A stretch of DNA of 64,000 bases from IMG/VR virus record IMGVR_UViG_3300037502_002993, positions 156,599 through 220,598 of that record; one strand, 5' to 3'. This document shows, piece by piece, positions 3,001 through 64,000 of this stretch. How positions within the stretch are numbered: the first letter of the stretch is position 1; every line of letters starts with the position of its first letter. Under the pieces are notes generated by a model. The model searched no databases and was not told where the DNA came from. It saw nothing but the letters and a program-made list of their open reading frames with translations. The position numbers and the translations under genes were made by a program.

Positions 3001-4645
3001 GTTCCCGTCCTACGTTCTCACGCATAGCAGGAGAGAACAGGGTATCTCTCAAGGCATTGCGGGCAGCCCCCTCCCCGGTAAAGCGTCCTGAGGTGATGTC
3101 ATATACCTCACGCTCCACCGATACATCCCCAGTACGCAGGATGCGCATCTCATGAAGAATGCGTGAGAGGTACCCAGGGATGATCTCCACGATACTGCGT
3201 TGGGTCAGGTGATTAAAAGCACTCTCTTGATCAATCGTGTGGAAGCCCCCATCGGTCAGTTTGCCTTCCAGACCGAAGGTGGGGAATATGTTACGCGCGG
3301 CATTCTGCAGGATACCCCGCCAGCCATAGCTCTGTTCAGGATCATTGACGTAGTCCTGAATCAGTGAGGGGGCATTGGCAAGGCCGTACGCCAGGAGGTG
3401 GTTACGTCCCCCTAGGCGCTCATTGAGGCGATCAGTATGGGGACGTAGACGATCTCCAAGCTTAGGTGCCAGACGTGACATCGCCCAACTGCTGGCGCCG
3501 CTCCCAGCGAGCATCCCAGCGGTGTTGACCCTATCGCCCATTCCTGCCATGTCTGCCATCATTTCGGCAGAGCTGGCGGAGCTGTCCAGGCCCTGCAGGC
3601 CGCGGGTCATGGCATCGACTAGATTACGGCGTACCTGGGGCCCATAGGTCCTTAAATGGGAGTGCAGGCTCTCACTGGCCATCTGCGAGGCCTGGAGTGT
3701 TAAGGCATGCCCCAAGTGCTCTCTCTTAAAGATCGCATTGCGTCCCGCATTCGGGTCAAAACCACTGCTGCCGATCAGGTCATTAAACTGCTGGGAATCC
3801 AGCACGGTAACGGCATGCTTGCGCTTGGCATGTTCTGGCAGTGATGAGTTATGAATCAGTGATTCAAACGCATTGCGACTCAGTGCTAGTTGAGCGCCGG
3901 CTAGACGACGCATATCCCGCAACATAAACAGGGAGCGGAACTGAAGCTCCAACCCCTTCTTGCCGATCTGGTGACCTACGGTATCCTGATAGGCCACCTG
4001 ACGGTGTTGTGCATTGCGAATGTCGGTAAGGATCTCATGGGTCAGCTCAAAACGACCCGCCTCTACCCGGTCACGAATTCCCTCTTCGACCTTCTCCTGG
4101 CTATCGCGCTCTTCTTCACGTCTCTCCTGTTGCACTGACGAAGAGGCATGGAGACTCGCCATCATCTCCGCGAGTTCACTGTTCTCGCGATCTCGCTCTG
4201 ATCCGGTTTGACTGCGGTTGCGATCAATCTGGTACTGGAGGCTCTCCTTACGCCGAGCAATGGCCTGTTCCAACTGGTCATAACGCTTACTGGAGAGTCG
4301 ATCCTTTAGACGGGGAAGCTGGCGTTCAGCCTGCTCTGTGATATTGAGTAAGGATGATGCATTCTCCCGAACGACCTGATCACGAGCCTCTCGCGCAAAG
4401 CTAATGCCCCGACGCCCTTCATCGATTAGGGCATTATACCCATCGGGCAAGGCGCGATCCAGTACCAGGTTCAGAGAGGTCTGTGATTTCACCCCACCTA
4501 AGAATCCACGCTTGAACCCAGCAGTAAACCGCTTCAGTTTAGATTGTTGGGTTTCCCCTCCATCAATATCGAACAGGGCATCGAGATCATCCAGTTCAGG
4601 AAGATCCCAATCATCATTATCCAGCTTATGGTGTTTCTTTGCCAT
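1..4645 (-). CDS. Large tail tape-measure-like virion protein (phiKZ gp181-like), running off the left window edge
   Basis: ATG at 4645 with GAGGT SD; N-terminus MAKKHHKLDNDDWDLPELDD. Frame is open where spot-checked (1081-1140 reads GAAAGAAGGSLLGRGARAL; 1-60 open), not checked codon by codon. Divergent from the vRNAP beta' gene. Absent from the ORF track because it has no stop in the window. Confidence 0.75.
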   Translation of the reverse strand, partial: MAKKHHKLDNDDWDLPELDDLDALFDIDGGETQQSKLKRFTAGFKRGFLGGVKSQTSLNLVLDRALPDGYNALIDEGRRGISFAREARDQVVRENASSLLNITEQAERQLPRLKDRLSSKRYDQLEQAIARRKESLQYQIDRNRSQTGSERDRENSELAEMMASLHASSSVQQERREEERDSQEKVEEGIRDRVEAGRFELTHEILTDIRNAQHRQVAYQDTVGHQIGKKGLELQFRSLFMLRDMRRLAGAQLALSRNAFESLIHNSSLPEHAKRKHAVTVLDSQQFNDLIGSSGFDPNAGRNAIFKREHLGHALTLQASQMASESLHSHLRTYGPQVRRNLVDAMTRGLQGLDSSASSAEMMADMAGMGDRVNTAGMLAGSGASSWAMSRLAPKLGDRLRPHTDRLNERLGGRNHLLAYGLANAPSLIQDYVNDPEQSYGWRGILQNAARNIFPTFGLEGKLTDGGFHTIDQESAFNHLTQRSIVEIIPGYLSRILHEMRILRTGDVSVEREVYDITSGRFTGEGAARNALRDTLFSPAMRENVGRELDRVVQQYDPENVLSDEARTALRERLMRDSATGGRFDPEQYLQWGGYDKDTPDDTLNELEQFFRERFEFDEGDKLVRNVDNMRRLQESSSEFLRLRDVVPDSRAAIQRIYGTGSQELLRGLGLVRDEIGQDFVNHPSIWEMYRGAGDRAPQQDAEEVGPTTSDYIKEETDRLKTWFKENRPQDVERFNAFKEKAQQRVNETKARINDELERSGVKSQLAEVREQAESQIDRLKEKWTDRTSDHLGHLAGDRSDDARERIMQEMQRRADRAKRREEWERLKTDLFTKDNLRNPRLLYHRLKEGHYFDAETGKLIESFGDIKGRVVDRFGNTVITAQEWKDGLVDNEGRTVSSLRRHIEQFAETPQVTAVKARIAPLATRVKNKVVDTFNNLRKDIFVEGEERPRVRMADLLKGRFFDRESGEPVTNPEDIKGSLVTEEGNEVLSFEEIEKTITAEGTPHPIRKNRSFLSRWSRRAARGYWNLTKRYYGWLGGKALGAAKTFFNIDRDKEPKKEGVLPRTMRWLRDPKKEIDEESFSNPTEGLLSRMLDKLDRRLPPEAHRRGSWQDLFSREKGDKEEGDKEGAPQEKEKTTSFLEDLMGLIPGGSILNRIKELFTGPGGAAAGAAAGAAGGSLLGRGARALGRGAKWGARNLLMRPAGWALKGGLIAGKGLVATLGWPVVLGAAAATGAFFLGRHLWRRYQSTKGDLQQLRMVQYGFDPDSHSQVKAALSMEAALLEHVRVVDGEVTINTGAINPQHLLEPFGLSVDSEDEAHFEQWNTWAINRFNPVLLAHLNAWKTHSPNSDFHELDTQLDDETMRDYLDDMVRAVGEEPYTFTVDPFGGGNDLTGRDLVQTYLERIRGNLREERRRHQAAAMSPVVAAQAGLTQEEREREQRQRAASRRDTPTVSTATIEASRAINPRDLLTVQGRGGVALPTRDTGYTRLQQLRLRTYGVENLESSLTRAILTIEDELYSRFTWEDGKATYSVSPRHFFEEFGALFG

Positions 4646-4724: not shown

Positions 4725-6395
4725 ATGTCGTCGGTACTTCCTAAGCGAGCAGAAATCCCCTTAAACCTCTCTCTGTTGATCCCCACAAAGGAGCAGCTTC
4801 GAACCATTCGTGAAGTGAAAGTGACGGATGTCTTTGATGGCCCTGGAGGGAACTTTCACGACGAGGGTCTCTACTCTACCCTAATCTTCGGTAAGGTGGG
4901 GGATGACCTTCGTGATAAACGCTTTGGGTATATCCGCTTAAAGCTGCCCATTCTTCATCCGGTGATCTATTCTCAATTGATCAAGCTCAGGGGCTTCTAC
5001 AAGGAGATCCTCTCGGGAACCGGCTACGCCACCTGGGATGAAAAACAAAAGGACTTCGTCTTAAGTGATGCCCTCTCTGGCCAGACGGGCTATCACTTCT
5101 TTATGTCTCACTGGAAGGATCTGGTGTTTAAGCGTTCAGGCTCTGATATTCGGGATGTGCGTATTAAGTCCATTGAGACCTATCGGGATCGAGCTCAGTT
5201 GACGGAACTGCTGGTATTGCCAGCCGGACTTCGTGACATTGATCTTGAAGCGGATGGTCGGGCTAAAAGTGATGCGATTAATGAGCTCTACCATTCCGTA
5301 CTGTCCCTGGCACGAACCATTCCCGACCCCCCACCGAGAGGGAACGATGTTGAGATCTACGATCGGGTACGGTTTAACCTTACTCTGAAGGTGGGTGAGA
5401 TCTACACCTACATCGAGAATCTGGTCAGTGGTAAGCGGGGACTGATTCAGAACTACTGGGCCAGTCGGCGTGTGTTCAATGGCACCCGGAATGTCATCTC
5501 CTCACTCAACACCGCAGCCAACGACCTAGGGGCGCCCAATCGTCCTTCCTTTAAGGACGTGGTCATCGGGACCTATCAAGCCGCCAAGTGTGTGCTCCCC
5601 CATACCAAGTTCTTTATGACTCAGTGGTTACTTGGGGATGTCTTTGACACTACCTCCAATCGGGTTCAGTTGGTAGACCCCAAGACCAAGAAGTTGGTCT
5701 GGGTAGAGGTAGGTAATGAGGAGGTGGATCGTTTTACTACATCAGAAGGCCTTGAAGGTCTGATCAATGAACTCTCGGTAGTGGAGAAGCGCCATCGTCC
5801 GATCGTGGTTAAAGGTCACTATCTGGCTCTGATGTATCTGGATGAGGCTCAGGGATTTAAACTGATCCGTGATATTGACGAGCTCCCCGATGGGGCAGAC
5901 CCGGATAGAGCACAGCCGTTAACCTATATCGAGTTGGTTTACCTCTCAGGTATACATCGCTGGCGGGACTTCCCTTGTTTTGTAACGCGTTATCCCGTGG
6001 AGAATTTTAACTCCTCCATTCCGATGATGATGTACGTCAAAACCACCACTCGGGGAGAGTTACGTTATCCCATCAATGACGATTGGACAGGATACGACGA
6101 AGGACCCATTGCCTTGGAATACCCGAAGCTCCGTGACGGGAGAGTGCCAGACTACCATGACAGCACCAGCGTGAGTCCCTCTACCCTGGATGCCTTCGGA
6201 GGGGACTTTGATGGCGACATGGTAAGTGTTATTGCAGCTTATGCTGATAACAGTATCGAAGAGGCAAAGGCGTATTTCAAGCGACGTGAAGCGCACATTC
6301 AAGCAGGGGGTGGGTTGGCGTTCTCAACCAATATCCACACCTTGAAACTGACCATGGCTTTCTTAACAGGCGAGCCGGTGGACGAGGTCACTTAA
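4725..6395 (+). CDS. Virion RNA polymerase beta'-like catalytic subunit (phiKZ gp180-like)
   Basis: GLYSTLIFG...FGYIRL..PILHP, RRVFNGTRNVIS, and catalytic Mg-binding motif GGDFDGD. Confidence 0.93.
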   Translation: MSSVLPKRAEIPLNLSLLIPTKEQLRTIREVKVTDVFDGPGGNFHDEGLYSTLIFGKVGDDLRDKRFGYIRLKLPILHPVIYSQLIKLRGFYKEILSGTGYATWDEKQKDFVLSDALSGQTGYHFFMSHWKDLVFKRSGSDIRDVRIKSIETYRDRAQLTELLVLPAGLRDIDLEADGRAKSDAINELYHSVLSLARTIPDPPPRGNDVEIYDRVRFNLTLKVGEIYTYIENLVSGKRGLIQNYWASRRVFNGTRNVISSLNTAANDLGAPNRPSFKDVVIGTYQAAKCVLPHTKFFMTQWLLGDVFDTTSNRVQLVDPKTKKLVWVEVGNEEVDRFTTSEGLEGLINELSVVEKRHRPIVVKGHYLALMYLDEAQGFKLIRDIDELPDGADPDRAQPLTYIELVYLSGIHRWRDFPCFVTRYPVENFNSSIPMMMYVKTTTRGELRYPINDDWTGYDEGPIALEYPKLRDGRVPDYHDSTSVSPSTLDAFGGDFDGDMVSVIAAYADNSIEEAKAYFKRREAHIQAGGGLAFSTNIHTLKLTMAFLTGEPVDEVT

Positions 6396-6397
6396 TC

Positions 6398-9300
6398 ATG
6401 GCACAGCAGAAGTTTGATATCTTTTTTCGACGTGTGGGGATTCGTGATCGGGCCCACCTTGCCCGACCGCGTCTGTTCCCATTTGGGGAGTTCGCCTTCC
6501 CGTTTGAGAGTATCTATCACTTTAACCAGAGCAATGTGCACAATGGACCGACCCGAAACGACCCTGTACTGCAGAGCGTGGCCGGTCGTGTGTTCATTGA
6601 ACACGTCACTGAACTCTCCGCTACCGAGGGGAACCCCCGTAAGACTTCGATCAACGTTAGAATGTTGGAGAATGACTTCCGGCGCCGTAGTCGGGGCCTT
6701 CGCCCCTTGCGTCGTGATGAGGCACTGGCGATCAACCCCCGTAATCTGCTTGTTGTGAACTATGCCATGCTTTATCCGACCTACCGCTATACGGTGTCGT
6801 TTAAGGCGGAGTACTATCGCTGGGTTAACATCGCCAGTACCTTCTGGCAGCGGGTAGCGGATCTCCATCAGCGTTTCCGCTGGCATCAGTTCGTGGAGGT
6901 GGGTGTCCCTGAGCGGGTGCCTGGGTATGAGGATTTTCTTCGTATCAGTAATGGCATCACGGCAAAGTCGCTCGATGCCTTTGCCGAACCCGGTGCCTTA
7001 GACCTAGTGGATCTGTGGCAGTGGATGGGGGAGTCCCGTGAGGCGTCAAACCTCGCCAAGGTGAAAGACCCCAGTCTGGTGAACCTGATCTTCCGGGTAC
7101 GGGGTCATTTCTGTCTCATGAACCTGGGACTGATCGACCAGTGGCGCAAAGCCCCAGAGGGGGAGTTGGCCCTTGAAGGGTTTGGATTGGAAGAGTGGGA
7201 GGAGGTTGGTCAGGAGATCGCCTCACTGGAGAGTGTGCAAAGTGATATCTTAGCGCCCACTCAACTGCAACGGCTGTTTCTCGCCCTGCTAAGGCGTCTT
7301 GGGAAGGTACAGAGTGGAGAAGAGGGGGTAGCGGACCCTGAAGAGGAAGCGCCCGTAGAGCGCGCCCAGGAGGCACCTAAGCGCATTACCGTCGATCAGG
7401 GGGATGACGATCCTGAAGGTGCAACTTCATCAAGCGGTACTGTAGGGGAGGTCAGTTCGAAAAAAGAGGACGATGTTCTCTCACTGCCACCTTTAGACGA
7501 TGCGCTTAAGTTCCCTGATTTCGATCAGGAACCCGAACCCCCTGCTGAGCCTGACCCGAAAAGTGTGACCTACCGACCAGAGCGAGTCACACCCCCGCGA
7601 GAAGAGCGCCCGGTAGTGGAGAGTGATGACACTGAGGGCGATTACAGTACGGCACTTAAGGCGTATGCCGATCAGCAACTAGAAGCGGGACTGATCACGG
7701 CAGGTGCGCATAAACGGATACTGGCCGAGGCAGAACACTACAAGACGCTACCCAACCCATACGGGGATGAAGGGACCTTAGGGGAGAGTCTTGAGATCAC
7801 TCAAGAAGACCTCTCACTTGAGGATCGTGAGACCTTCCCTGACCGCGATACCATCATTGACAAATCCATGCTGAAGAGCTCTCCACGGGAAATGACCCGG
7901 AAGTACGTGGAAAAGACCCTTAAGAAAGACGTCATGAATGCCGTGTTGGCAGCGACTCAGCACCAACAGGTGGTGATCAAGCGGTATAACGTGGAAGTGG
8001 TTCATGACAACATGAATCACTTTGAGGTCCACACGCTAACCTTGAAGCCCATTCATGGTCGGCAGTCCACTGTGCGGTTTCGTCTCCCCGTGGTAGATAA
8101 AGACGGGCGTTTCATGGCAAATGGCCAGCGAAATCGGCTTCGTTTCCAGCGTGCGGATTAAAACTCTACCCTACTGTATAGTTTTTTCAGTAGAGGTAAG
8201 TGATAATGGGACAACCACTTAAGTATACAACTGAAGATTTTATTGACACAGCTACCATGATGTTCGGTGACCACCTTAGCTACGAGAAAGCCGTTTATAG
8301 GGGTAAACGTCAGCGCCTTATTGTAACATGTACGCACCACGGGGAGTTCGATGTAAACCCACTGGTGTTTCTGATGAGTACCCACGGCTGCGCCAATTGT
8401 GCTAGGGATGAAACAAAAGAACGCTTCATACGTCGTTCTTTGGAACTTCATGGTGATCGTTACGACTATAGTCTCGTTGAAGTGGACGGATATACAGACC
8501 CTGTTACGGTTGTCTGTAAAACCCACGGTGCATTCGAAACATCTATTTACGGACATTCTGTAAGGGGCAATCAGTGTCCTAAATGTTCACGAGAACGCGA
8601 CCGTACCTGCCCTAACGAGTGGATTAAAAAAGTTAAGAAGATCCACAAGGGTAAGTACGACTATAGTAAGGCAGTCTACATTCACGGTAAGTTGCCAGTT
8701 ACGATTATCTGTCCGCACCACGGGGAGTTCACCCAGCCAGCACGCTCCCACTACGCGGGACATGGATGTAAGCAGTGTCATATTCAGTTTGTTGCTAGGT
8801 CGAATAAAGAGAGATTTGTTAGGCAGGCCAAAGAAAAACATGGTGTTCAGTATGATTACAGCCGCGTAGTGTTTTTGACGACAAAGGAAAAGGTTGAGAT
8901 ACTCTGTCGTAAACACGGACCGTTCTGGGTAACCCCGAACGCGCACGCATCTAGTGGCGCGGGCTGTCCACGCTGCATTGAGTCAAAGGGTGAACGAAGA
9001 ATTAGATTATTCCTAGGGAACCATAAAGTTCGGTTTATTCAGGAATATCGGATCGAACCCTTCAGGTATAGATACGATTTCTTCTTACCTGATTACAACT
9101 GCGTAATAGAACACCATGGTGGTCAGCACTACATGCCTGTTAAACGTTTTGGAGGGGAAAAAGCCTTTAAGCAATGTGTGCAGCGAGATAAGAACAAAAA
9201 ACACATCGCAAAAAGGAAAGGGATTACTTATCGAGTCACTAACTACAAAATGATGAACAACAGCAAACTCGAAAAGAATTTAACCCGCATCCTTCTAGAA

Positions 9301-12300
9301 CTCGGTCACTCTCTCGACCACTAACCCATTATTACCTATGGTCCGCTTAAAACCCCCCTAACTGCGGGAACCTGCTAATGATGCTGTTACTACCACTTGT
9401 CGGGGGAAACCCACGGCAACACCCACTCCAGTAATGGAAGTAGTGGGCAGGGTAAAAACGTAACAGCTAGGCACAACCGACGCAACGAAGTCCCTACGTT
9501 GGTCAATCGACCAATATGGGATGTGTTCAGAGGCCATCGAAAACTACAGCTTGTTTAATGCAAGCCTAATGACACAGGTATAGAACCCTGTGGTCTCCAC
9601 GGAGATTAAAGTGAGTAGAGTAGCTGATTTCTATATCGGCGAAACGGGGGGCTTCTGTTTGCTATTCACGAACCAGAAGAAGATATGGTCCAATTTGAAT
9701 TGATTGCTTCCAATTCGTAAGATCTCTCCAAGCAGGGTTGCTCTCACCTCTTACTATAATAAAACGTTTGTCGACCGCTCTTCTCGCTCTACGAATAACT
9801 TTGCTCAATGGGTCACACGCCAAATGACCCAGATCGGACTTGATCCGGATAACGACCAGATCACTAACCTGAAGTTAGGTAATGCGTTTGATCAGTCCAT
9901 TGAAGTGCCAAGGGTTTACTCCTTGCTCTCAGCGCGCTTTACGCAATTTGCCGTAGGGCCACTACAGTTCTACTTGAGCTACCATAAACGAGCTGCTCAT
10001 TTTGAACAACATGGGATACGGGTAGAACAGGTAGAGAAAGAAGGGCGAACGGTAATCGGGATGGATCGTGAGTCATTAAGTCCCATCACGGTAGATGCCA
10101 GTGACACTTTCTATCTGGGCGATGAGCCCTTAGGTACTCTGTGTCAGGTAGTGGGACTTCCCGAAGCCAAAGCACCGCTGGATATCGCGGAGGTAGGGGT
10201 TTCCAATAAGGTCATCCCGGTGGGGTTGGTGCTGGCTTACCAGATGGGGCTGTCTAAACTCATCGAGAAACTTAATTGTGATGTGGCCAGACACCGACGG
10301 GGCAGTCGGTTTGAAATGGCCGATGATGAGTACAGTGTGGTCTTTCAGGATGAGGTGCTTGTCTTCTCGCGGTTGGATCGACGGGCCTCACTGGTGTTGG
10401 CGGGACTGAATCGCTATCACCGCGCCCTACGGCAATTCAGTGTCTGGGACTTTGATCGTAAAGACGTCTACCACAACGTCCTTCTGGATCAGGGCCTTGG
10501 GGTGCGCTACCTGCGGGAAATCGATACCCTCTTTAATGTCTGGGTTGATCCCATCACAAAAGGACTCCTGGAGGAGATGGGGGAACCCACTGACTTTGGA
10601 GGACTGCTCCTCAGAAGTGCTGACCTACTGCTACACGACCACGCTCCCAATGAGGTAGAAGGGGAGTACATGCGCTATCGGGGGTATGAGCGCATGGCAG
10701 GGATGGTCTATGGGGAGCTGGCGAGGGCCTGCAAAGCCTATCACGCGCGCAGTCACTACGGTGATGCTGCAGTGGATCTAAATCCCCACCAGGTGTGGCA
10801 GCGCATTGTGGGTGACCCCTCATCCATGATCGTGGAGGAAGCCAACCCCTTTACGGTGGTCAATGAACAGGAAATCATGACCTATCGTGGAGATGGCGGT
10901 CGTAGTGGTAAGTCCATGGTGAAGCGGACGCGTATCTACTCTGACACTGATGTCGGGGTAGTGAGTGAATCCACCCTAGATTCGGGAGATGTCGGGGTAG
11001 TGGCGTACCTGGCCCCTGATGCGAACTTCACCTCCACTCGGGGATTGACCCGACGTTACGATAAAAGTAAGGATGGCGCAGCAACCCTCCTATCCACTGC
11101 TGCACTCAATGCCCCTTGTGCGGACAGAGATGACGCCAAGAGAATCCGATAAGTTGGTTCCCCCAGCAGGTAACTGTTGGGTAAACACTCCTCTAATTGC
11201 TGGGACCTCTCGTAAGACCTTAGGTACGATCCCGTTCCGAAAGGAAGCCATGGATAGCCGGGCCTGTAAGAATCCTAAGGATAGAGACAACCATGCAGCG
11301 AAGTCCCTAAGCCTACTCAACGAGTAGGGATGGGATGTGTTCATCGACTATCGAAAGGCGCCCATTAGGGCGAACTGAGTAGAGTAGGGCCAAGCGGTAG
11401 GCCGCTAACGTGGAATGGCGTTAGTTATAAGTCCTTTAAACCGAAACGGGGAGCTTCCTACTTGTTAAGAGAGGAAGAAGATATAGTCAGTCCTTTAGCG
11501 AGAGTTAAAGGTAACCATGGAGTGGTTAGCTCGATCTAGCGAATCGGGTTTGGAAAGGGAAGGAGGATTTCACCCAATTAGGGTGATCTTCATCTGTGTA
11601 CAGCGCAACTTTATCTCAGTGCAAGCAAGACAGGGCATTTGGGCGGAAGGGTATACGGTCACGCCACTAAGGACGGGGTATGAACAGGTACTGGCCTCAC
11701 GGGTAACAGATCTGTTCGCGACCATGGCACAGCAAGATGGGAAGGTTACGTCAGTGGAAGAGAATTCCATTGTGGTGACCTATAAGGATGGGACGCAGGA
11801 GAAGGTCCTTCTTGGGAAGCGCTACGGTAAAGCCGCTGGGTATACCTACCCACAGACCTTGGTAACGGATCTAAAGGTAGGGGATAAGGTTAAGTCAGGT
11901 GGGGTGATTGCGTATAATCGTAACTATTTCATGCCTGATACCTTTAATCCCGGTCATGTGGTATTGAAAGCGGGGGTAATGTGTAAGGTGGCCCTGATGG
12001 ACCCCATCGATGCTTTGGAAGATGGGTCTGTTATCTCTGAGGAGATCGCCAAGCAGTTCACCACGCAAACCAGTGAGGTCAGGACCCTGCAAGCGCGTTT
12101 TGATCAGTCTGTCAGGGACCTAGTGAAAGTCGGCGATCATGTGGACTTGGATTCCATTCTATGCATTATTGAAGACCCGGAGATCCGCGATAATCCCCTG
12201 TTCAATGACATTGCCATGGATACCTTAAGAAAGCTCTCTTCCCACACCCCACGAGCAAAAGTGACAGGGGTGGTGAGCCGAGTTGAGGTGTTCTATCATG

Positions 12301-12734
12301 GTGAGTTTGAGGACATGTCAGAGTCCCTTCAAGGTGTGGCGGGTCAATCCAATCGTCGTCGCCGTCAAGAGGCCAAGGCCTCAGGGCAGCCCGCTTTCGA
12401 TGGTCAGGTGGATACGGGCTTTCGTATCCGTGGGGCCGCCCTTGATCCGGATAGCGTGGCCATTCAGGTGACCATTGATCATGACGTGGGGGTAACTGCG
12501 GGGGATAAGTTGGTGTACGCCAGCCAGCTGAAGTCCGTCATTTCTCGTGTCATGACGGGTCGTAATGAAACCGAAAGCGGTGAAGCCATCGATGCCCTCT
12601 TTGGTAACACCTCTGTGGAGGATCGGATGGTGTTGTCCCCCAAACTCATGGGCACCACCAATACCCTACTCCGGGTCCTTTCCCAACATATCGCATCTGT
12701 CTATCGAGGACGTAGTGATGTCAAGAGACCGTAA
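6398..12734 (+). CDS. Virion RNA polymerase beta-like subunit (phiKZ gp178-like), three exons: 6398-8158, 9707-11145, 11606-12734 (~1442 aa spliced)
   Basis: Splicing restores RFQRAD|LPIRKISPSRVALTSYY and DDAKRI|NFISVQ in frame; beta motifs EDG, GDK...QLKSVIS, DALFG in exon 3. Confidence 0.9.
8159..9706 (+). mobile_element. Group I intron 1 (1548 nt) with homing endonuclease ORF
   Basis: 5' exon ends in U (GCGGAT), intron ends in G9706; IGS GTCCGC at 9341-9346; core elements CTAACTGCGGGAA, GTTCAGAGGCCA, GAAACGGGGG, AAGATATGGTCC in 9350-9695. Confidence 0.9.
8206..9324 (+). CDS. Intron-encoded homing endonuclease: four zinc-ribbon (DUF723-like) repeats plus C-terminal Vsr/EDxHD-like nuclease
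   Basis: Four repeats of Y(D/S)Y...C..HG.F...C..C; C-terminal ESKGE...YDFFLP..N..IEHHGGQHY...RD..K; GAGGT SD; visibly more A/T-rich than the flanking exons. Confidence 0.85.
   Translation: MGQPLKYTTEDFIDTATMMFGDHLSYEKAVYRGKRQRLIVTCTHHGEFDVNPLVFLMSTHGCANCARDETKERFIRRSLELHGDRYDYSLVEVDGYTDPVTVVCKTHGAFETSIYGHSVRGNQCPKCSRERDRTCPNEWIKKVKKIHKGKYDYSKAVYIHGKLPVTIICPHHGEFTQPARSHYAGHGCKQCHIQFVARSNKERFVRQAKEKHGVQYDYSRVVFLTTKEKVEILCRKHGPFWVTPNAHASSGAGCPRCIESKGERRIRLFLGNHKVRFIQEYRIEPFRYRYDFFLPDYNCVIEHHGGQHYMPVKRFGGEKAFKQCVQRDKNKKHIAKRKGITYRVTNYKMMNNSKLEKNLTRILLELGHSLDH
11146..11605 (+). mobile_element. Group I intron 2 (460 nt, ORF-less)
   Basis: Exon GAAU pairs with GUUC (11157-11160, U.G at the splice site); P10 AAGTTG (11151-11156) is complementary to 3' exon CAACTT; core CTAATTGCTGG, GTTCATCGACTA, AAGATATAGTC; terminal G11605. 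Confidence 0.92.
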
Positions 12735-12927
12735 GAAGATCAGTCCCGATCTCCTCTACACGCAAAACCTGGCCGTGGTCAGTGCCGCCCTTGAATTGGG
12801 CGGCTGTGTCCTGTGTGAGGTCGCCGGTGGCGAAGAGCTCTCCAATCGCCTCAATGATAAAACCCATGAGAAGAAGGACTTCCAGGAACTCCTGGCAGCC
12901 CGCCTGATGGTCAAACTGGGAGTCTGA
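12718..12927 (+). CDS. Small hypothetical protein (69 aa)
   Basis: ATG 12718 with GAGGA SD, overlapping the end of the RNAP gene and abutting the next gene. Confidence 0.6.
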   Translation: MSRDRKKISPDLLYTQNLAVVSAALELGGCVLCEVAGGEELSNRLNDKTHEKKDFQELLAARLMVKLGV

Positions 12928-54746: not shown

Positions 54747-54848
54747 GTGGTTTCCTCAGCGGGTGGGTGAAAGCTCATACCTTTTCCAATTCAAGAAATG
54801 GTCCAATACTCACTGCAAGCATCCTGTAGGCAAACAGGAGAGGTTGTC

Positions 54849-57146
54849 ATGCAAAAAATCGATCCCGAGCAGGTGTTGGGTCGCGAAGCCAAACACATCA
54901 CGTATGTCCGTGATCAATTCGGTAAGTCCCATGATGCGCTCTTCGTCAAGGAGTGGATTCACCTAAAGGATGGCACCCGCATACCGAGACTCCATTGTGT
55001 CGAAGACTACCGCCGGCCGTTTTGGCTAGTGCACGAAGGACAGCGGACCTATAAGGACCGCAAAGATTTCATGCCGCTCAACAAGCTCCAGAAATACCAT
55101 TCTACCCAGATTGATCTATCCCGTAACATCGCTACCCTCTTACGGGACTTTAGTTTTGGTCCTAACCCACCCCTGAAAAAACTTGCCCGTAATCCTTACC
55201 TCTTTGGGACTGACGTCACCACCCCTTGCCTACTTAAGGCACAGTACCGCAAACGTTATCCTGACTTATCGTCACCGAACCTGGTTGCAGGGGGTGACGT
55301 TGAGACTGATGTGGTCCATCACACCAATGACATTATCTGCATGTCAGTGACCTGTAAGCAAAACGCCATCTTGGTCTACTTAAAGCGTTGGATCGAGGAC
55401 ATTCCCAACATCATCGAAGAAACCAAAGAGGCTGCCGATAAGTACATTGGAGAGGACCTTAAGAAGCGTGGCATCACGCTTGAGGTGGTCGTATGCGATA
55501 CCCCAGGTCAAATCGTCATGACGTGTCTCAATAAGCTCCATGAGTGGAAACCGGACTTCTTCTCGTTCTGGAACATGGACTTCGATATGGGGCGGATGCT
55601 AAAAGCCCTAGAGGATGATGGTATCGACCCTAAGGATATCTTCTCTGATCCCTCCGTCCCACCGAACTATCGCTACTTTGACTGGCGTGAAGGACAAGCG
55701 CAAAAAGTCACCGCCTCAGGAAAGGTCATCTCTATCAACATCGAAGACCGCTGGCCTTGGGTTACCCACCCCGCCACCTGGCAGGTGATCGATGCCATGC
55801 CTGTGTATCGAGGACTAAGACGGGTAGATGGAAAAGACCCTTCTTACAAGCTGGGATATATCCTAGAGAAGGAGAAGGCAGGGAACAAGCTCCAGTTTGA
55901 TGACATGCGACACTTAACCGGACTGCGCTGGCACCAAGAGATGCAAAAGCATCACAAGGTAAAGTATGGGGTGTACAACCTATACGACTCCCTTGATCTG
56001 GAAATCCTTGATGAGAAGACGGAAGATCTATCACGTAAGATCACCATGTTCTCCGTCAACTCCGATTACAAGAACTTCAACTCCAACCCAAAACGACTGT
56101 GTGATGCCTTGCACTTCTGGCACTTGGAAAAAGGGGAGGTCATTGGGGCGTCTTCTGATGAGGCGGATCATGAGTTAGATGTTCACGTCATTGGGGCGGA
56201 TTCCTGGATCGTTACCCTACCTACGTACATGGCCGGGCCGGAGGGGGCTAAGGTCATGGAGGAGCTGCCTGACTACAAAACCCTTTACTTTAACCATGTT
56301 GCGGATCAACACTAAATCAAGGTCCCCTCGGGGCGAAATCCCCGTGTGAAACCTCTCTAATTGCTGGAATGCCCTGAAGAGCTGACCTACCACAATGCTG
56401 CCCGAAAGGGCCGGTTAAAAAGCATGACCCCGAAGGGGCTTCGTCTACGGATGAAGGGTTTGACAACAGGTCGGATGTGAATGCGCTATCACAAGGGGTA
56501 ACCGTGGGACCTAAGGTCCCCTTTAGCAGCCAAGGGCCTACCGGTCCCTCCTTGGAGGGACCCATGGTCAAGGTTCATCGACTATCCAAAGGCGCCCATC
56601 AGGGCGAACCGAGTAGAGTAGGGCCAGTGGTCTGGTGGGTTGTCAGTGTGGAATGGCACTGGCGGTAAGTCCCTTAAACCGAAACGGGAGGCACCTTACC
56701 AGGTAAGGCTGGAGGTGAAGATATAGTCAGTCCAGTAAAGAAATTTACTGCAAGTACCTAATCCTAATAACATGTAGTGGTTAATAAACCAGACTACATG
56801 AGGTACCGAGCTTGACCTAGTTAGCGCTTATCCCAGTGCCAGTATGATGCTCAACATTGGGCGTGATACGTGCATTATGGAGTTTTCTCAAATACAGGGA
56901 CTCTCCGAGCACCGTCGTAGAGAGTTGGGAGTGAACTTGACAGGGGGGAGCACAAATGCCCTTGAGATCACTGAAAAGATCTTTGGCATGCCGCCTGTGG
57001 ATCAGGTGTTAAAGGACTTCTGTGAGAAGCACGGCTATCCCCTTCCTGAAGAACTGATAGGGGACGATACCGTGTACGTAGAAACCGATGGGACTTATGT
57101 ACCCCTAGATGAGGAAGCCGTCGATAATGCCATCCCTGATTGGTAA
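54849..57146 (+). CDS. Split family-B DNA polymerase, exonuclease plus motif A part (phiKZ gp82-like); exons 54849-56306 and 56811-57146 (~597 aa)
   Basis: Exo motifs DVET, WNMDFD, YNLYD; splicing restores HVAD|LDLVSAYPS (PolB motif A-like). Confidence 0.88.
56307..56810 (+). mobile_element. Group I intron 3 (504 nt, ORF-less)
   Basis: Exon GGAU pairs with GUCC (56322-56325); P10 TCAAG (56317-56321) is complementary to 3' exon CTTGA; core CTAATTGCTGG, GTTCATCGACTA, AAGATATAGTC; terminal G56810. Confidence 0.92.
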
Positions 57147-63756: not shown

Positions 63757-64000
63757 TCGTATGGCGAAGATTCACGGCTCTCTCTTTTCTCATGCCTTGT
63801 CAGTAACCCCTCTTTTAAAAGGAGTCCCTCTTAGGGAATGCTGACCAGACTCTGCCCTACCTTAGGGTGGGGTTCCGTTCATTAGGTGATCTTACCCAGG
63901 GGTGGCCGAACCAGCCCCTGGCTCTAAGGTGCGTCGTTAAAAGTCCTGTGAGGTAGGGGCGGTGCGGCGTGCATGACAAGCCTTTTGAACATTGTCGAGG

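What the first reader, a model, noticed from the sequence alone, without database searches (positions are those of the whole stretch)
6398..12734. Virion RNAP beta gene is split into three exons by two group I introns
Seen: three ORF fragments join exactly at U|...G boundaries into one ~1442-aa frame; intron 2 has a perfect 6-bp P10. Known: group I introns occur in RNAP genes of jumbo phages. Inference: making virion RNAP needs two self-splicing events, and automated annotation would call three false genes.
Basis: partly seen in the sequence, partly recalled or inferred. Interest (0 to 1): 0.6.

Follow-up and report, generated by a model that had tools for sequence, protein, structure and literature searches.

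The report
Two introns split phage RNA polymerase gene
[quoted passage not shown] This kind of arrangement is already known from the related phage PhiPA3, so it is a well-supported but not unprecedented case.

Summary
Window 6398..12734 (+) encodes the ortholog of phiKZ gp178, the beta-like subunit of the virion RNA polymerase, in three exons: 6398..8158, 9707..11145 and 11606..12734. Searched separately, the exons cover one RNAP-beta profile at positions 5-574, 575-1053 and 1055-1423. They cover the uninterrupted phiKZ-type protein at 8-594, 595-1075 and 1077-1449, so neither junction has a gap.

Intron 2 (11146..11605, no ORF) scores 78 bits on Rfam Group I (cut-off 50). It has a U•G 5' splice site, a terminal G and a perfect 6-bp P10.

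Intron 1 (8159..9706) scores 44 bits, below the cut-off. It has a perfect 6-bp P1 and a terminal G. Across four orthologous introns, 38 of 97 consensus pairs show compensatory changes. Its P1 loop holds a 372-aa homing endonuclease with four DUF723 zinc fingers and a Vsr-like (EDxHD-type) nuclease domain. A near-identical phage in a sludge metagenome lacks exactly this cassette.

Relatives carry or lack introns at the same sites. Three distinct insertion sites lie within 20 nt of the conserved DD motif, which is the PhiPA3 gp210 site.

Splicing itself is untested because no RNA runs were found. This is a new member of a known kind.

The parts
6398..8158 (+). Exon 1 of the virion-RNAP beta-like gene (587 codons); its last base U8158 is the 5' splice site of intron 1
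   Evidence: Matches PHROG 3148 positions 5-574 and KTN4_219 residues 8-594. An in-frame TAA follows immediately.
8159..9706 (+). Intron 1: group I intron (subgroup IA-like), 1548 nt, ending in G9706
   Evidence: RF00028 scores 44.4 bits, E 1.6e-9, on the core. The orthologous intron in L010 scores 59.2 bits. P1 is GCGGAU (8153-8158) against GUCCGC (9341-9346), 6/6 pairs. L010, L011 and L037 have an intron at the identical site, while most relatives are contiguous there.
8164..8195 (+). Hairpin in the P1 loop just upstream of the endonuclease ribosome-binding site (CUCUAC...GUAGAG)
   Evidence: 6/6 pairs. L010, L011 and L037 keep a hairpin here with different sequences. A role in masking the RBS is inference.
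8196..9331 (+). Endonuclease cassette (1136 nt) inserted in the P1 loop; absent from a near-identical phage
   Evidence: A contig of run X5 (2179 nt, depth 31) joins 8195 directly to 9332. Depth in X5 is 0 across 8279-9263, while the flanks are about 31.
8206..9324 (+). Homing endonuclease ORF (372 aa): four DUF723/DUF4379 zinc-finger repeats plus a C-terminal Vsr-like (EDxHD-type) nuclease
   Evidence: Pfam DUF723; PHROG 559, 681 and 9084. AF2 model pLDDT 86.6. Foldseek top hits are Vsr 1cw0/1vsr and the I-Bth0305I catalytic domain 3r3p, TMt 0.79. D291, E302, H308 and D328 are invariant and E263 nearly so. The gene caller starts it at this ATG.
9340..9706 (+). Guide sequence (GGUCCGC, 9340-9346) and ribozyme core P3-P9 of intron 1
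   Evidence: GGUCCGC is conserved after the ORF stop in ours, L010, L011 and L037. In the 4-sequence consensus fold, 38 of 97 pairs have compensatory changes.
9707..11145 (+). Exon 2 (479 codons plus the first two bases of an Ile codon); U11145 is the 5' splice site of intron 2
   Evidence: Matches PHROG 3148 positions 575-1053 and KTN4_219 residues 595-1075.
11146..11605 (+). Intron 2: ORF-less group I intron (subgroup IA-like), 460 nt, ending in G11605
   Evidence: RF00028 scores 78.2 bits against a cut-off of 50. P1 is GAGAAU/GUUCCC with U11145•G11157. P10 is 6/6; P2, P7 and P9 pair as expected. In the Rfam alignment a 95-nt insertion at the P7.1/P7.2 position lies between P7 and P3'.
11512..11605 (+). 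3' extension of intron 2 (hairpins P9.1-P9.3) beyond the Rfam model end; it contains the false ATG start at 11517
   Evidence: Folding 11490-11605 gives stacked hairpins at -39.5 kcal/mol, z = -3.2. The first 30 residues of the 405-aa ORF have no counterpart in homologs.
11606..12734 (+). Exon 3 (third base of the Ile codon, 375 codons and the stop)
   Evidence: Matches PHROG 3148 positions 1055-1423 and KTN4_219 residues 1077-1449.

Best explanation
The ortholog of phiKZ gp178 (beta-like subunit of the virion-packaged multisubunit RNA polymerase) in this roughly 220-kb phiKZ-like jumbo phage is interrupted by two phage-type (subgroup IA-like) group I introns.

Proposed mechanism:
- On the pre-mRNA, each intron's guide sequence pairs with the end of the upstream exon to form P1, with a U•G pair at the splice site.
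- An external guanosine attacks after U8158 or U11145.
- The freed exon 3'-OH then attacks after the terminal G (G9706 or G11605). For intron 2, a 6-bp P10 helps this step.
- The three exons are ligated into one 1442-codon frame.
- In-frame stops at or just after each 5' splice site keep ribosomes out of the ribozymes.

Intron 1 is mobile. Its P1 loop carries a homing endonuclease with four DUF723 zinc-finger DNA-binding repeats and a Vsr-like/EDxHD nuclease. This enzyme presumably cuts intron-less alleles of co-infecting relatives near the D|L/I/Q-P-I-R-K junction, so that repair copies the intron in. Intron 2 has no ORF and is either immobile or moved in trans.

Shown here: the anatomy, exact junctions, family membership of the RNA, structural covariation, and presence/absence polymorphism. 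Inferred: actual splicing and endonuclease activity.
For: - Exon-by-exon matches abut without a gap on PHROG 3148 and on the uninterrupted gp178 ortholog KTN4_219. Intron-less relatives read ...QRAD|(Q/V/I)P(I/L)RK... and ...DD(A/P/M)KRI|NFI... straight through.
- RF00028 hits: intron 2 at 78.2 bits; intron 1 at 44.4 bits, with its ortholog in L010 at 59.2 bits.
- P1 U•G, terminal G, and P10 for intron 2.
- 38 of 97 consensus pairs show compensatory changes among four orthologous site-1 introns whose exons are only 51-61% identical.
- Patchy occupancy: site 1 is filled in 3 of 26 IMG/VR loci, a list in which four contigs already seen as L010-L013 reappear. Introns lie at or near site 2 in five loci.
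- The endonuclease cassette is precisely absent in run X5.
- Orthologous endonuclease ORFs lie in the same intron position in L010 and L011, and in L037 by its contig (44-50% identity).
- Vsr / I-Bth0305I fold and conserved acidic and His residues (PMC3239194).
- Precedent in PhiPA3 (PMC11620839).
- The same arrangement is seen in contigs of independent runs X2, X4 and X5.
Against: - There is no RNA evidence: no run on record as RNA holds the phage. X15, guessed to be RNA, holds a different relative and shows no spliced junction of this gene.
- Intron 1 scores below Rfam's gathering cut-off (44.4 against 50) and has no convincing P10.
- Intron 2 has a weak P1: 5 of 6 pairs, including U•G, with one A·C mismatch.
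- Foldseek E-values for the nuclease domain are modest (4e-3 to 1e-2). Sequence searches of PDB and Pfam found nothing for that domain.
Confidence: 0.9

Rival explanations
1. A truly split gene: the three pieces are translated separately and assemble as subunits, as jumbo-phage RNAP genes are often split. The intron-like RNAs would then be inert relics.
For: Split beta and beta' genes are normal in these phages (PMC7598289). A gene caller does produce separate products. A weak AAGG lies 6 nt before ATG 11517.
Against: - Exon 2 has no credible start. TTG 9704 lies inside the intron end with no Shine-Dalgarno, and the caller's start loses 39 conserved residues.
- The 30 residues ahead of exon 3 are unconserved and lie in intron hairpins.
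- One codon is split across intron 2.
- The ribozyme cores are intact, with covariation.
- Most relatives encode one uninterrupted protein.
Confidence: 0.04
2. The introns are decayed and no longer splice, so the gene is a pseudogene in a defective or mis-assembled genome.
For: Intron 1 is below the Rfam cut-off. Intron 2 has lost, or never had, an endonuclease. The record is a metagenomic assembly rated 74% complete.
Against: - All three exons are open and conserved at 33-67% identity to relatives, with no frameshifts.
- Near-identical copies with the same introns occur in contigs from several independent studies.
- Compensatory changes show selection on intron 1 structure.
- The subunit belongs to the virion-packaged polymerase that transcribes early genes (PMC11620839).
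Confidence: 0.04
3. Intron 2 ends at 11510, where the Rfam model ends, and uses other splice sites than those proposed.
For: The Rfam alignment stops at G11510.
Against: Joining at 11510 gives a stop (AT+G, then TAA) and no homology. Homologs fix the exon 3 start at 11606/11607. P10 pairs with 11606-11611. The extra 95 nt fold into hairpins typical of P9 extensions.
Confidence: 0.01

Closest known systems
PhiPA3 gp210 intron in the virion-RNAP beta gene gp211/gp209 (Birkholz et al. 2024, PMC11620839)
   Same: It interrupts the same orthologous gene. It is a group I intron (RF00028 67.8 bits in L008). It lies in the same conserved DD...KRI region. The fragments are annotated as separate genes.
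   Different: The PhiPA3 intron sits right after the second Asp (D1072 in phiKZ numbering) and carries an HNH nickase. Our intron 2 sits 11 nt downstream, in the Ile codon, and has no ORF. Our phage also has a second intron about 1.4 kb upstream in the coding sequence, with a non-HNH endonuclease. No competition phenotype has been tested here.
I-Bth0305I / EDxHD homing endonuclease family (Taylor et al. 2011, PMC3239194)
   Same: It is encoded in a phage group I intron and has a C-terminal Vsr-like nuclease fold (3r3p among the top Foldseek hits, TMt 0.79). Conserved E, D, H and D residues are present. The D291-to-H308 spacing of 17 equals the D196-to-H213 spacing of I-Bth0305I (PMC3239194).
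   Different: The N-terminal DNA-binding part is four DUF723/DUF4379 treble-clef zinc-finger repeats, not NUMOD/HTH motifs. The ORF sits in the P1 loop, not in P5. Activity is untested.
T4 td/nrdB/sunY and Twort/SPO1-type phage group I introns (subgroup IA); several introns in one phage gene
   Same: The core has an insertion at the P7.1/P7.2 position and the AAGAUAUAGUC P7 strand. Insertion is at conserved codons of an essential nucleic-acid enzyme. ORF-containing and ORF-less versions both occur. Two introns in one gene is described for Twort nrdE (title cited in PMC12908238).
   Different: The host gene is a multisubunit RNAP subunit of a phiKZ-like phage. The sequences are only about 75% alike over core fragments to any intron in the phage collection.
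Repeated DUF723/CapR-type zinc-finger DNA-binding modules of phage homing endonucleases (PMC10448857)
   Same: The same repeated zinc-finger modules serve as the presumed DNA-recognition part.
   Different: There they are fused to T5orf172 (GIY-YIG-related) nuclease domains in free-standing genes. Here they are fused to a Vsr-like nuclease inside an intron.

Membership tests
Group I intron (Rfam RF00028) - intron 2 | Conserved catalytic core scoring above the curated cut-off | tested here: met
   78.2 bits against a cut-off of 50, full model 1-253.
Group I intron (Rfam RF00028) - intron 1 | Conserved catalytic core scoring above the curated cut-off | tested here: inconclusive
   44.4 bits (E 1.6e-9 local) and 41.2 bits genome-wide, both below 50. 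P1 is separated from the core by the 1.1-kb ORF. The orthologous intron in L010 scores 59.2 bits.
Group I intron | P1 helix between the 5' exon end and an internal guide sequence, with U•G at the splice site | tested here: met
   Intron 1: GCGGAU/GUCCGC, 6/6 pairs, with the guide conserved in four orthologs. Intron 2: GAGAAU/GUUCCC, 5/6 pairs, with U11145•G11157.
Group I intron | Terminal guanosine at the 3' splice site, and exon ligation restoring the reading frame | tested here: met
   G9706 and G11605. Exon matches abut on PHROG 3148 and KTN4_219.
Group I intron | P10 pairing of the guide region with the 3' exon | tested here: met
   Met for intron 2: AAGUUG/CAACUU, 6/6. For intron 1 only 2 of 6 pairs were found, so it is not evident there. 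P10 is dispensable in many introns (own knowledge).
Group I intron | Secondary structure maintained by compensatory substitutions | tested here: met
   Intron 1 orthologs: 38 of 97 consensus pairs have changes on both sides. This covers four sequences, with no shuffle control. Intron 2 was not tested because no clear ortholog was available.
Group I intron | Guanosine-dependent self-splicing giving ligated exons | not testable with these tools
   No RNA runs hold the phage.
Subgroup IA (phage type) | Extra P7.1/P7.2 hairpins between P7 and P3' | tested here: met
   A 95-nt insertion lies at that position in the Rfam alignments. Several conserved hairpins with covariation lie between the P7 5' strand and P3'. 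The finer subclass (IA1 or IA2) was not determined.
EDxHD / Vsr-like homing endonucleases | Vsr-like nuclease fold | tested here: met
   Foldseek top hits are 1cw0, 1vsr and 3r3p, all with prob 1.00 and E 4e-3 to 1e-2; TMt is 0.79 for 3r3p. The model has pLDDT 86.6.
EDxHD / Vsr-like homing endonucleases | Composite catalytic motif E, D, x, H, D | tested here: inconclusive
   E263 (nearly invariant) and D291, H308 and D328 (invariant) in 16 sequences. The D-to-H spacing equals that of I-Bth0305I (PMC3239194). Residue-by-residue superposition was not examined.
EDxHD / Vsr-like homing endonucleases | N-terminal NUMOD-type DNA-binding region, as in the prototype | tested here: not met
   Four DUF723/DUF4379 zinc-finger repeats are present instead.
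phiKZ gp178-type virion RNAP beta-like subunit | Orthology by sequence and gene order | tested here: met
   48-54% identity over the full length to KTN4_219, with one hit per phage genome. The gp180 ortholog is upstream (51%) and the gp177-region homolog downstream. Packaging in virions is not testable here.

The most novel reading that the evidence does not exclude
The 20-nt stretch around the conserved DD...KRI codons of the virion-RNAP beta gene may be a contested homing hot spot in phiKZ-like phages. Three different intron insertion sites occur there:
- after CAD in L013 and the X15 relative;
- after DD in PhiPA3, 201phi2-1 and L022;
- in the Ile codon in this phage and L018.

On this reading the ORF-less intron 2 acts mainly as a shield. 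It splits the recognition site of gp210-like HNH endonucleases of co-infecting phages, so it would be a defensive element in the interference competition shown for PhiPA3 against phiKZ. The phage's many RNAP-gene introns (6 of 7 intron hits) would reflect the same arms race.
Probability: 0.2. Interest if true: 0.6.

Novelty: new member of a known kind. Interest (0 to 1): 0.4.

Why it matters
- Annotation: the gene should be recorded as one 1442-codon spliced gene. Public gene calls currently give five fragments.
- Biology: it extends the one studied case of a mobile intron in a chimallivirus virion-RNAP gene (PhiPA3 gp210, which mediates competition between phages). There is now a second insertion site in the gene, a different endonuclease family, and a natural endonuclease-plus / endonuclease-minus pair.
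- Experiments: the cluster of three insertion sites within 20 nt gives concrete material for testing how homing endonucleases and introns compete for, or protect, one essential site.

Tried and rejected
- Megablast of the whole region against 50,697 phage records found no match.
- Pfam on the three exons found no RNAP domain; only PHROGs recognise this divergent polymerase.
- PDB sequence and profile searches for the endonuclease found nothing meaningful, and Pfam on its C-terminal 124 aa found nothing. The fold search was needed instead.
- No RNA holder was found among the sequencing runs. X15 (guessed to be RNA, 6% of words) turned out to hold a different relative, with an intron after CAD and none at our site 2. 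It therefore gives no splicing evidence.
- No P10 was found for intron 1.
- Ending intron 2 at 11510 was rejected (see rivals).
- Orthology of our intron 2 with the L018 intron at the identical site is unresolved. About 100 nt (P7.1-P8) are roughly 85% alike, but the same stretch is also shared with this genome's DNA-polymerase intron, and the 5' halves do not align.
- Intron 2 against the phage collection gave only short core fragments at 73-81% identity.
All protein searches were done exon by exon, by reference.
Full report
**Context.** The window is the last 64 kb (156599-220598) of a 220,598-bp IMG/VR virus record with direct terminal repeats. Nucleotide megablast finds nothing in the phage collection. 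At protein level the nearest phages are phiKZ-like jumbo phages (PA1C, PhiPA3, Noxifer, 201phi2-1, phiKZ/KTN4), at 48-53% identity.

**Observation.**
- On the + strand lie four ORFs: 6398..8161 (587 aa), 8200..9324 (374 aa), 9704..11152 (482 aa) and 11517..12734 (405 aa).
GCGGAT ends at 8158 and is followed by TAA. The first insertion ends with G9706 before CTTCCA. AGAAT ends at 11145. The second insertion ends with G11605 before CAACTT.
- The count is 587 + 479 codons + one split Ile codon + 375 codons = 1442.

**The three pieces are one gene.**
- I searched each exon separately, by reference. The joined product was deliberately not built, searched or folded.
- PHROG 3148 (RNA polymerase beta subunit, 1424 positions) is matched at 5-574 by exon 1, 575-1053 by exon 2 and 1055-1423 by exon 3. 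The one missing position is the split codon.
- Against the uninterrupted 1451-aa gp178 ortholog of the phiKZ strain KTN4, the exons align to 8-594, 595-1075 and 1077-1449.
- KTN4 reads ...LQRAD|IPIRKV... and ...HDDPKR-I-NFISIQ... straight through the two sites.
- Gene order is conserved. The upstream 556-aa ORF (4725..6395) is 51% identical to the gp180 ortholog KTN4_220. The downstream ORF matches KTN4_217.
- gp178 is the beta subunit of the virion-packaged RNAP that transcribes early genes (PMC11620839).

**Intron 2 (11146..11605, 460 nt, no ORF).**
- Rfam RF00028 scores 78.2 bits against a cut-off of 50, over the full model.
- P1 pairs GAGAAU with GUUCCC, with U11145•G11157 and one A·C mismatch.
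- Immediately 5' of the guide, AAGUUG (11151-56) is the perfect complement of the first six exon-3 bases, which is P10.
- P2, P7 (GACUA/UAGUC) and P9 pair as expected.
- A 95-nt insertion between P7 and P3' marks the phage-type subgroup IA architecture.
- Rfam's alignment stops at 11510. Homology and P10 place the 3' splice site at 11605. The extra 95 nt fold into stacked hairpins (z = -3.2) and contain the spurious ATG 11517.
- An in-frame TAA lies two codons into the intron.

**Intron 1 (8159..9706, 1548 nt).**
- The core (about 9347-9706) scores 44.4 bits (E 1.6e-9 in a local search), which is below the gathering score.
- The reason is its anatomy. The guide sequence GGUCCGC (9340-46) forms a perfect 6-bp P1 with GCGGAU (8153-58), but lies 1.18 kb downstream of the splice site, because a gene sits in the P1 loop.
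- Orthologous introns at the identical site (GCGGAT|TAAAA...ATG|C) occur in three IMG/VR phages: L010, L011 and L037. They have the same guide sequence and an endonuclease ORF in the same place. L010's core scores 59.2 bits.
- A consensus fold of the four cores has 97 pairs, of which 38 show compensatory double changes. The ribozyme structure is therefore under selection, even though the surrounding exons are only 51-61% identical.
- L010, L011 and L037 have a P2 hairpin after the guide that our intron lacks.
- No convincing P10 exists for intron 1.
- The intron begins with an in-frame TAA in all four.

**The endonuclease.**
- The ORF most likely starts at ATG 8206 (GAGG nine nt upstream; this is also the gene caller's start).
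- It has DUF723/DUF4379 treble-clef zinc-finger repeats and matches PHROGs annotated as endonucleases.
- It belongs to a very large metagenomic family: 4119 hits at E<1e-5, some named very-short-patch-repair endonuclease by JGI.
- A 16-sequence alignment shows four C...C/H-G repeats and a C-terminal block with E263 (nearly invariant) and D291, E302, H308 and D328 (invariant).
- The AlphaFold model (pLDDT 86.6) gives Vsr (1cw0, 1vsr) and the catalytic domain of the intron endonuclease I-Bth0305I (3r3p, TMt 0.79) as the top three structural matches. All have probability 1.00 but modest E-values.
- I-Bth0305I is the prototype of the EDxHD family (PMC3239194). The D-to-H spacing (17) is the same.
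- The DNA-binding part differs: zinc-finger repeats instead of NUMODs. Such repeats are known as modular DNA-binding units of other phage homing endonucleases (PMC10448857).

**Evidence of mobility.**
- I surveyed 26 IMG/VR loci, four of which are the contigs already seen as L010-L013. Site 1 is occupied in three (L019, L020, L037) and contiguous in the rest. That includes relatives closer to our phage than L037.
- Intron-less alleles end exon 1 with GAC, and intron-containing ones with GAT.
- Contigs of public runs laid on 6900-12800 show the same intron-containing arrangement in independent studies (X2, X4, X5).
- In X5 (sludge metagenome) one contig joins 8195 to 9332, with zero depth across the skipped 1136 nt and depth about 31 on both sides. 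This is a near-identical phage whose intron 1 lacks exactly the endonuclease cassette.

**A hot spot around site 2.** Three insertion sites lie within 20 nt.
- Site a, after the CAD codon: L013 (a 529-aa HNH + NUMOD ORF) and the relative in run X15.
- Site b, after DD: PhiPA3 (gp210 HNH), 201phi2-1 (ORF-less, 87 bits) and L022 (PMC11620839).
- Site c, after the second base of the Ile codon: this phage (ORF-less) and L018, whose 1395-nt intron carries an HNH_3 ORF.
- Whether the L018 intron and ours are orthologous is unresolved.

**What is not shown.**
- No run on record as RNA holds the phage, so splicing is inferred from anatomy, conservation and precedent.
- Endonuclease activity and target site are also inferred.

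**Rivals.** Separate translation of three fragments, decayed introns, and another 3' splice site are each contradicted by several observations (see the rival entries). Together I give them about 0.1.

**Annotation.** The public gene call on an identical contig lists 587-, 372-, 442-, 65- and 405-aa products for this stretch.

**Verdict.** Group I introns in phage genes are classical, and an intron in this very gene is published for PhiPA3, so this is a new member of a known kind. Four points add some interest: a second site in the gene, an EDxHD-type zinc-finger endonuclease in the P1 loop with a natural ORF-less variant, a three-site hot spot at the DD motif, and an unusually intron-rich set of polymerase genes in this phage.

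Noticed in passing
window 54798..57146 (intron about 56297..56750): A third group I intron (RF00028, 54.6 bits) splits a DNA polymerase gene. PHROG 3011 positions 2-494 lie in 54798..56315 and positions 507-569 in 56844..57146. Its P7.1-P8 region is 76% identical to intron 2. Exact splice sites were not determined.
   Followed up: partly
window 63799..64000: A HEARO RNA hit (the RNA associated with HNH/IscB-type endonuclease ORFs; RF02033, 108.9 bits, cut-off 83), cut off by the window end. It suggests an IscB/IS200-605-type element near the end of the phage record.
   Followed up: no
outside the window, same genome: G000:C1:12586-15971 (-): Another RNAP subunit gene (PHROG 3295) is split. Positions 5-400 lie at 15971-14811 and positions 404-696 at 13506-12586. 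The 1.3-kb insert holds a group I intron hit (73.8 bits) and a 130-aa ORF with no PHROG match.
   Followed up: partly
outside the window, same genome: G000:C1:26831-29650 (-): An RNAP subunit gene (PHROG 2987) is split. Positions 1-416 lie at 29650-28403 and positions 424-476 at 26989-26831. The 1.4-kb insert holds three adjoining RF00028 hits (65.5, 37.3 and 21.8 bits). These may be tandem introns with a micro-exon, or one complex intron; this was not resolved. In all, 6 of the genome's 7 intron hits lie in multisubunit-RNAP genes.
   Followed up: partly
L013 (IMGVR_UViG_3300027365_000009) 3669-4038 and 10411-10788: This relative has further group I introns. One is in exon-3 territory, between residues 300 and 301 of our exon 3 (61 bits). 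One lies upstream of its gp178 ortholog, where our window has the gp180 ortholog (67 bits). Its site-a intron starts GCGGAT|TAA, like our intron 1.
   Followed up: partly
window 8164..8205, and the homologous stretches of L010, L011 and L037: The hairpin just before the endonuclease start overlaps the purine-rich ribosome-binding site. It is kept by different sequences in the four introns, which may mean translational control of the endonuclease, as in T4 td/I-TevI. This is an inference only.
   Followed up: no
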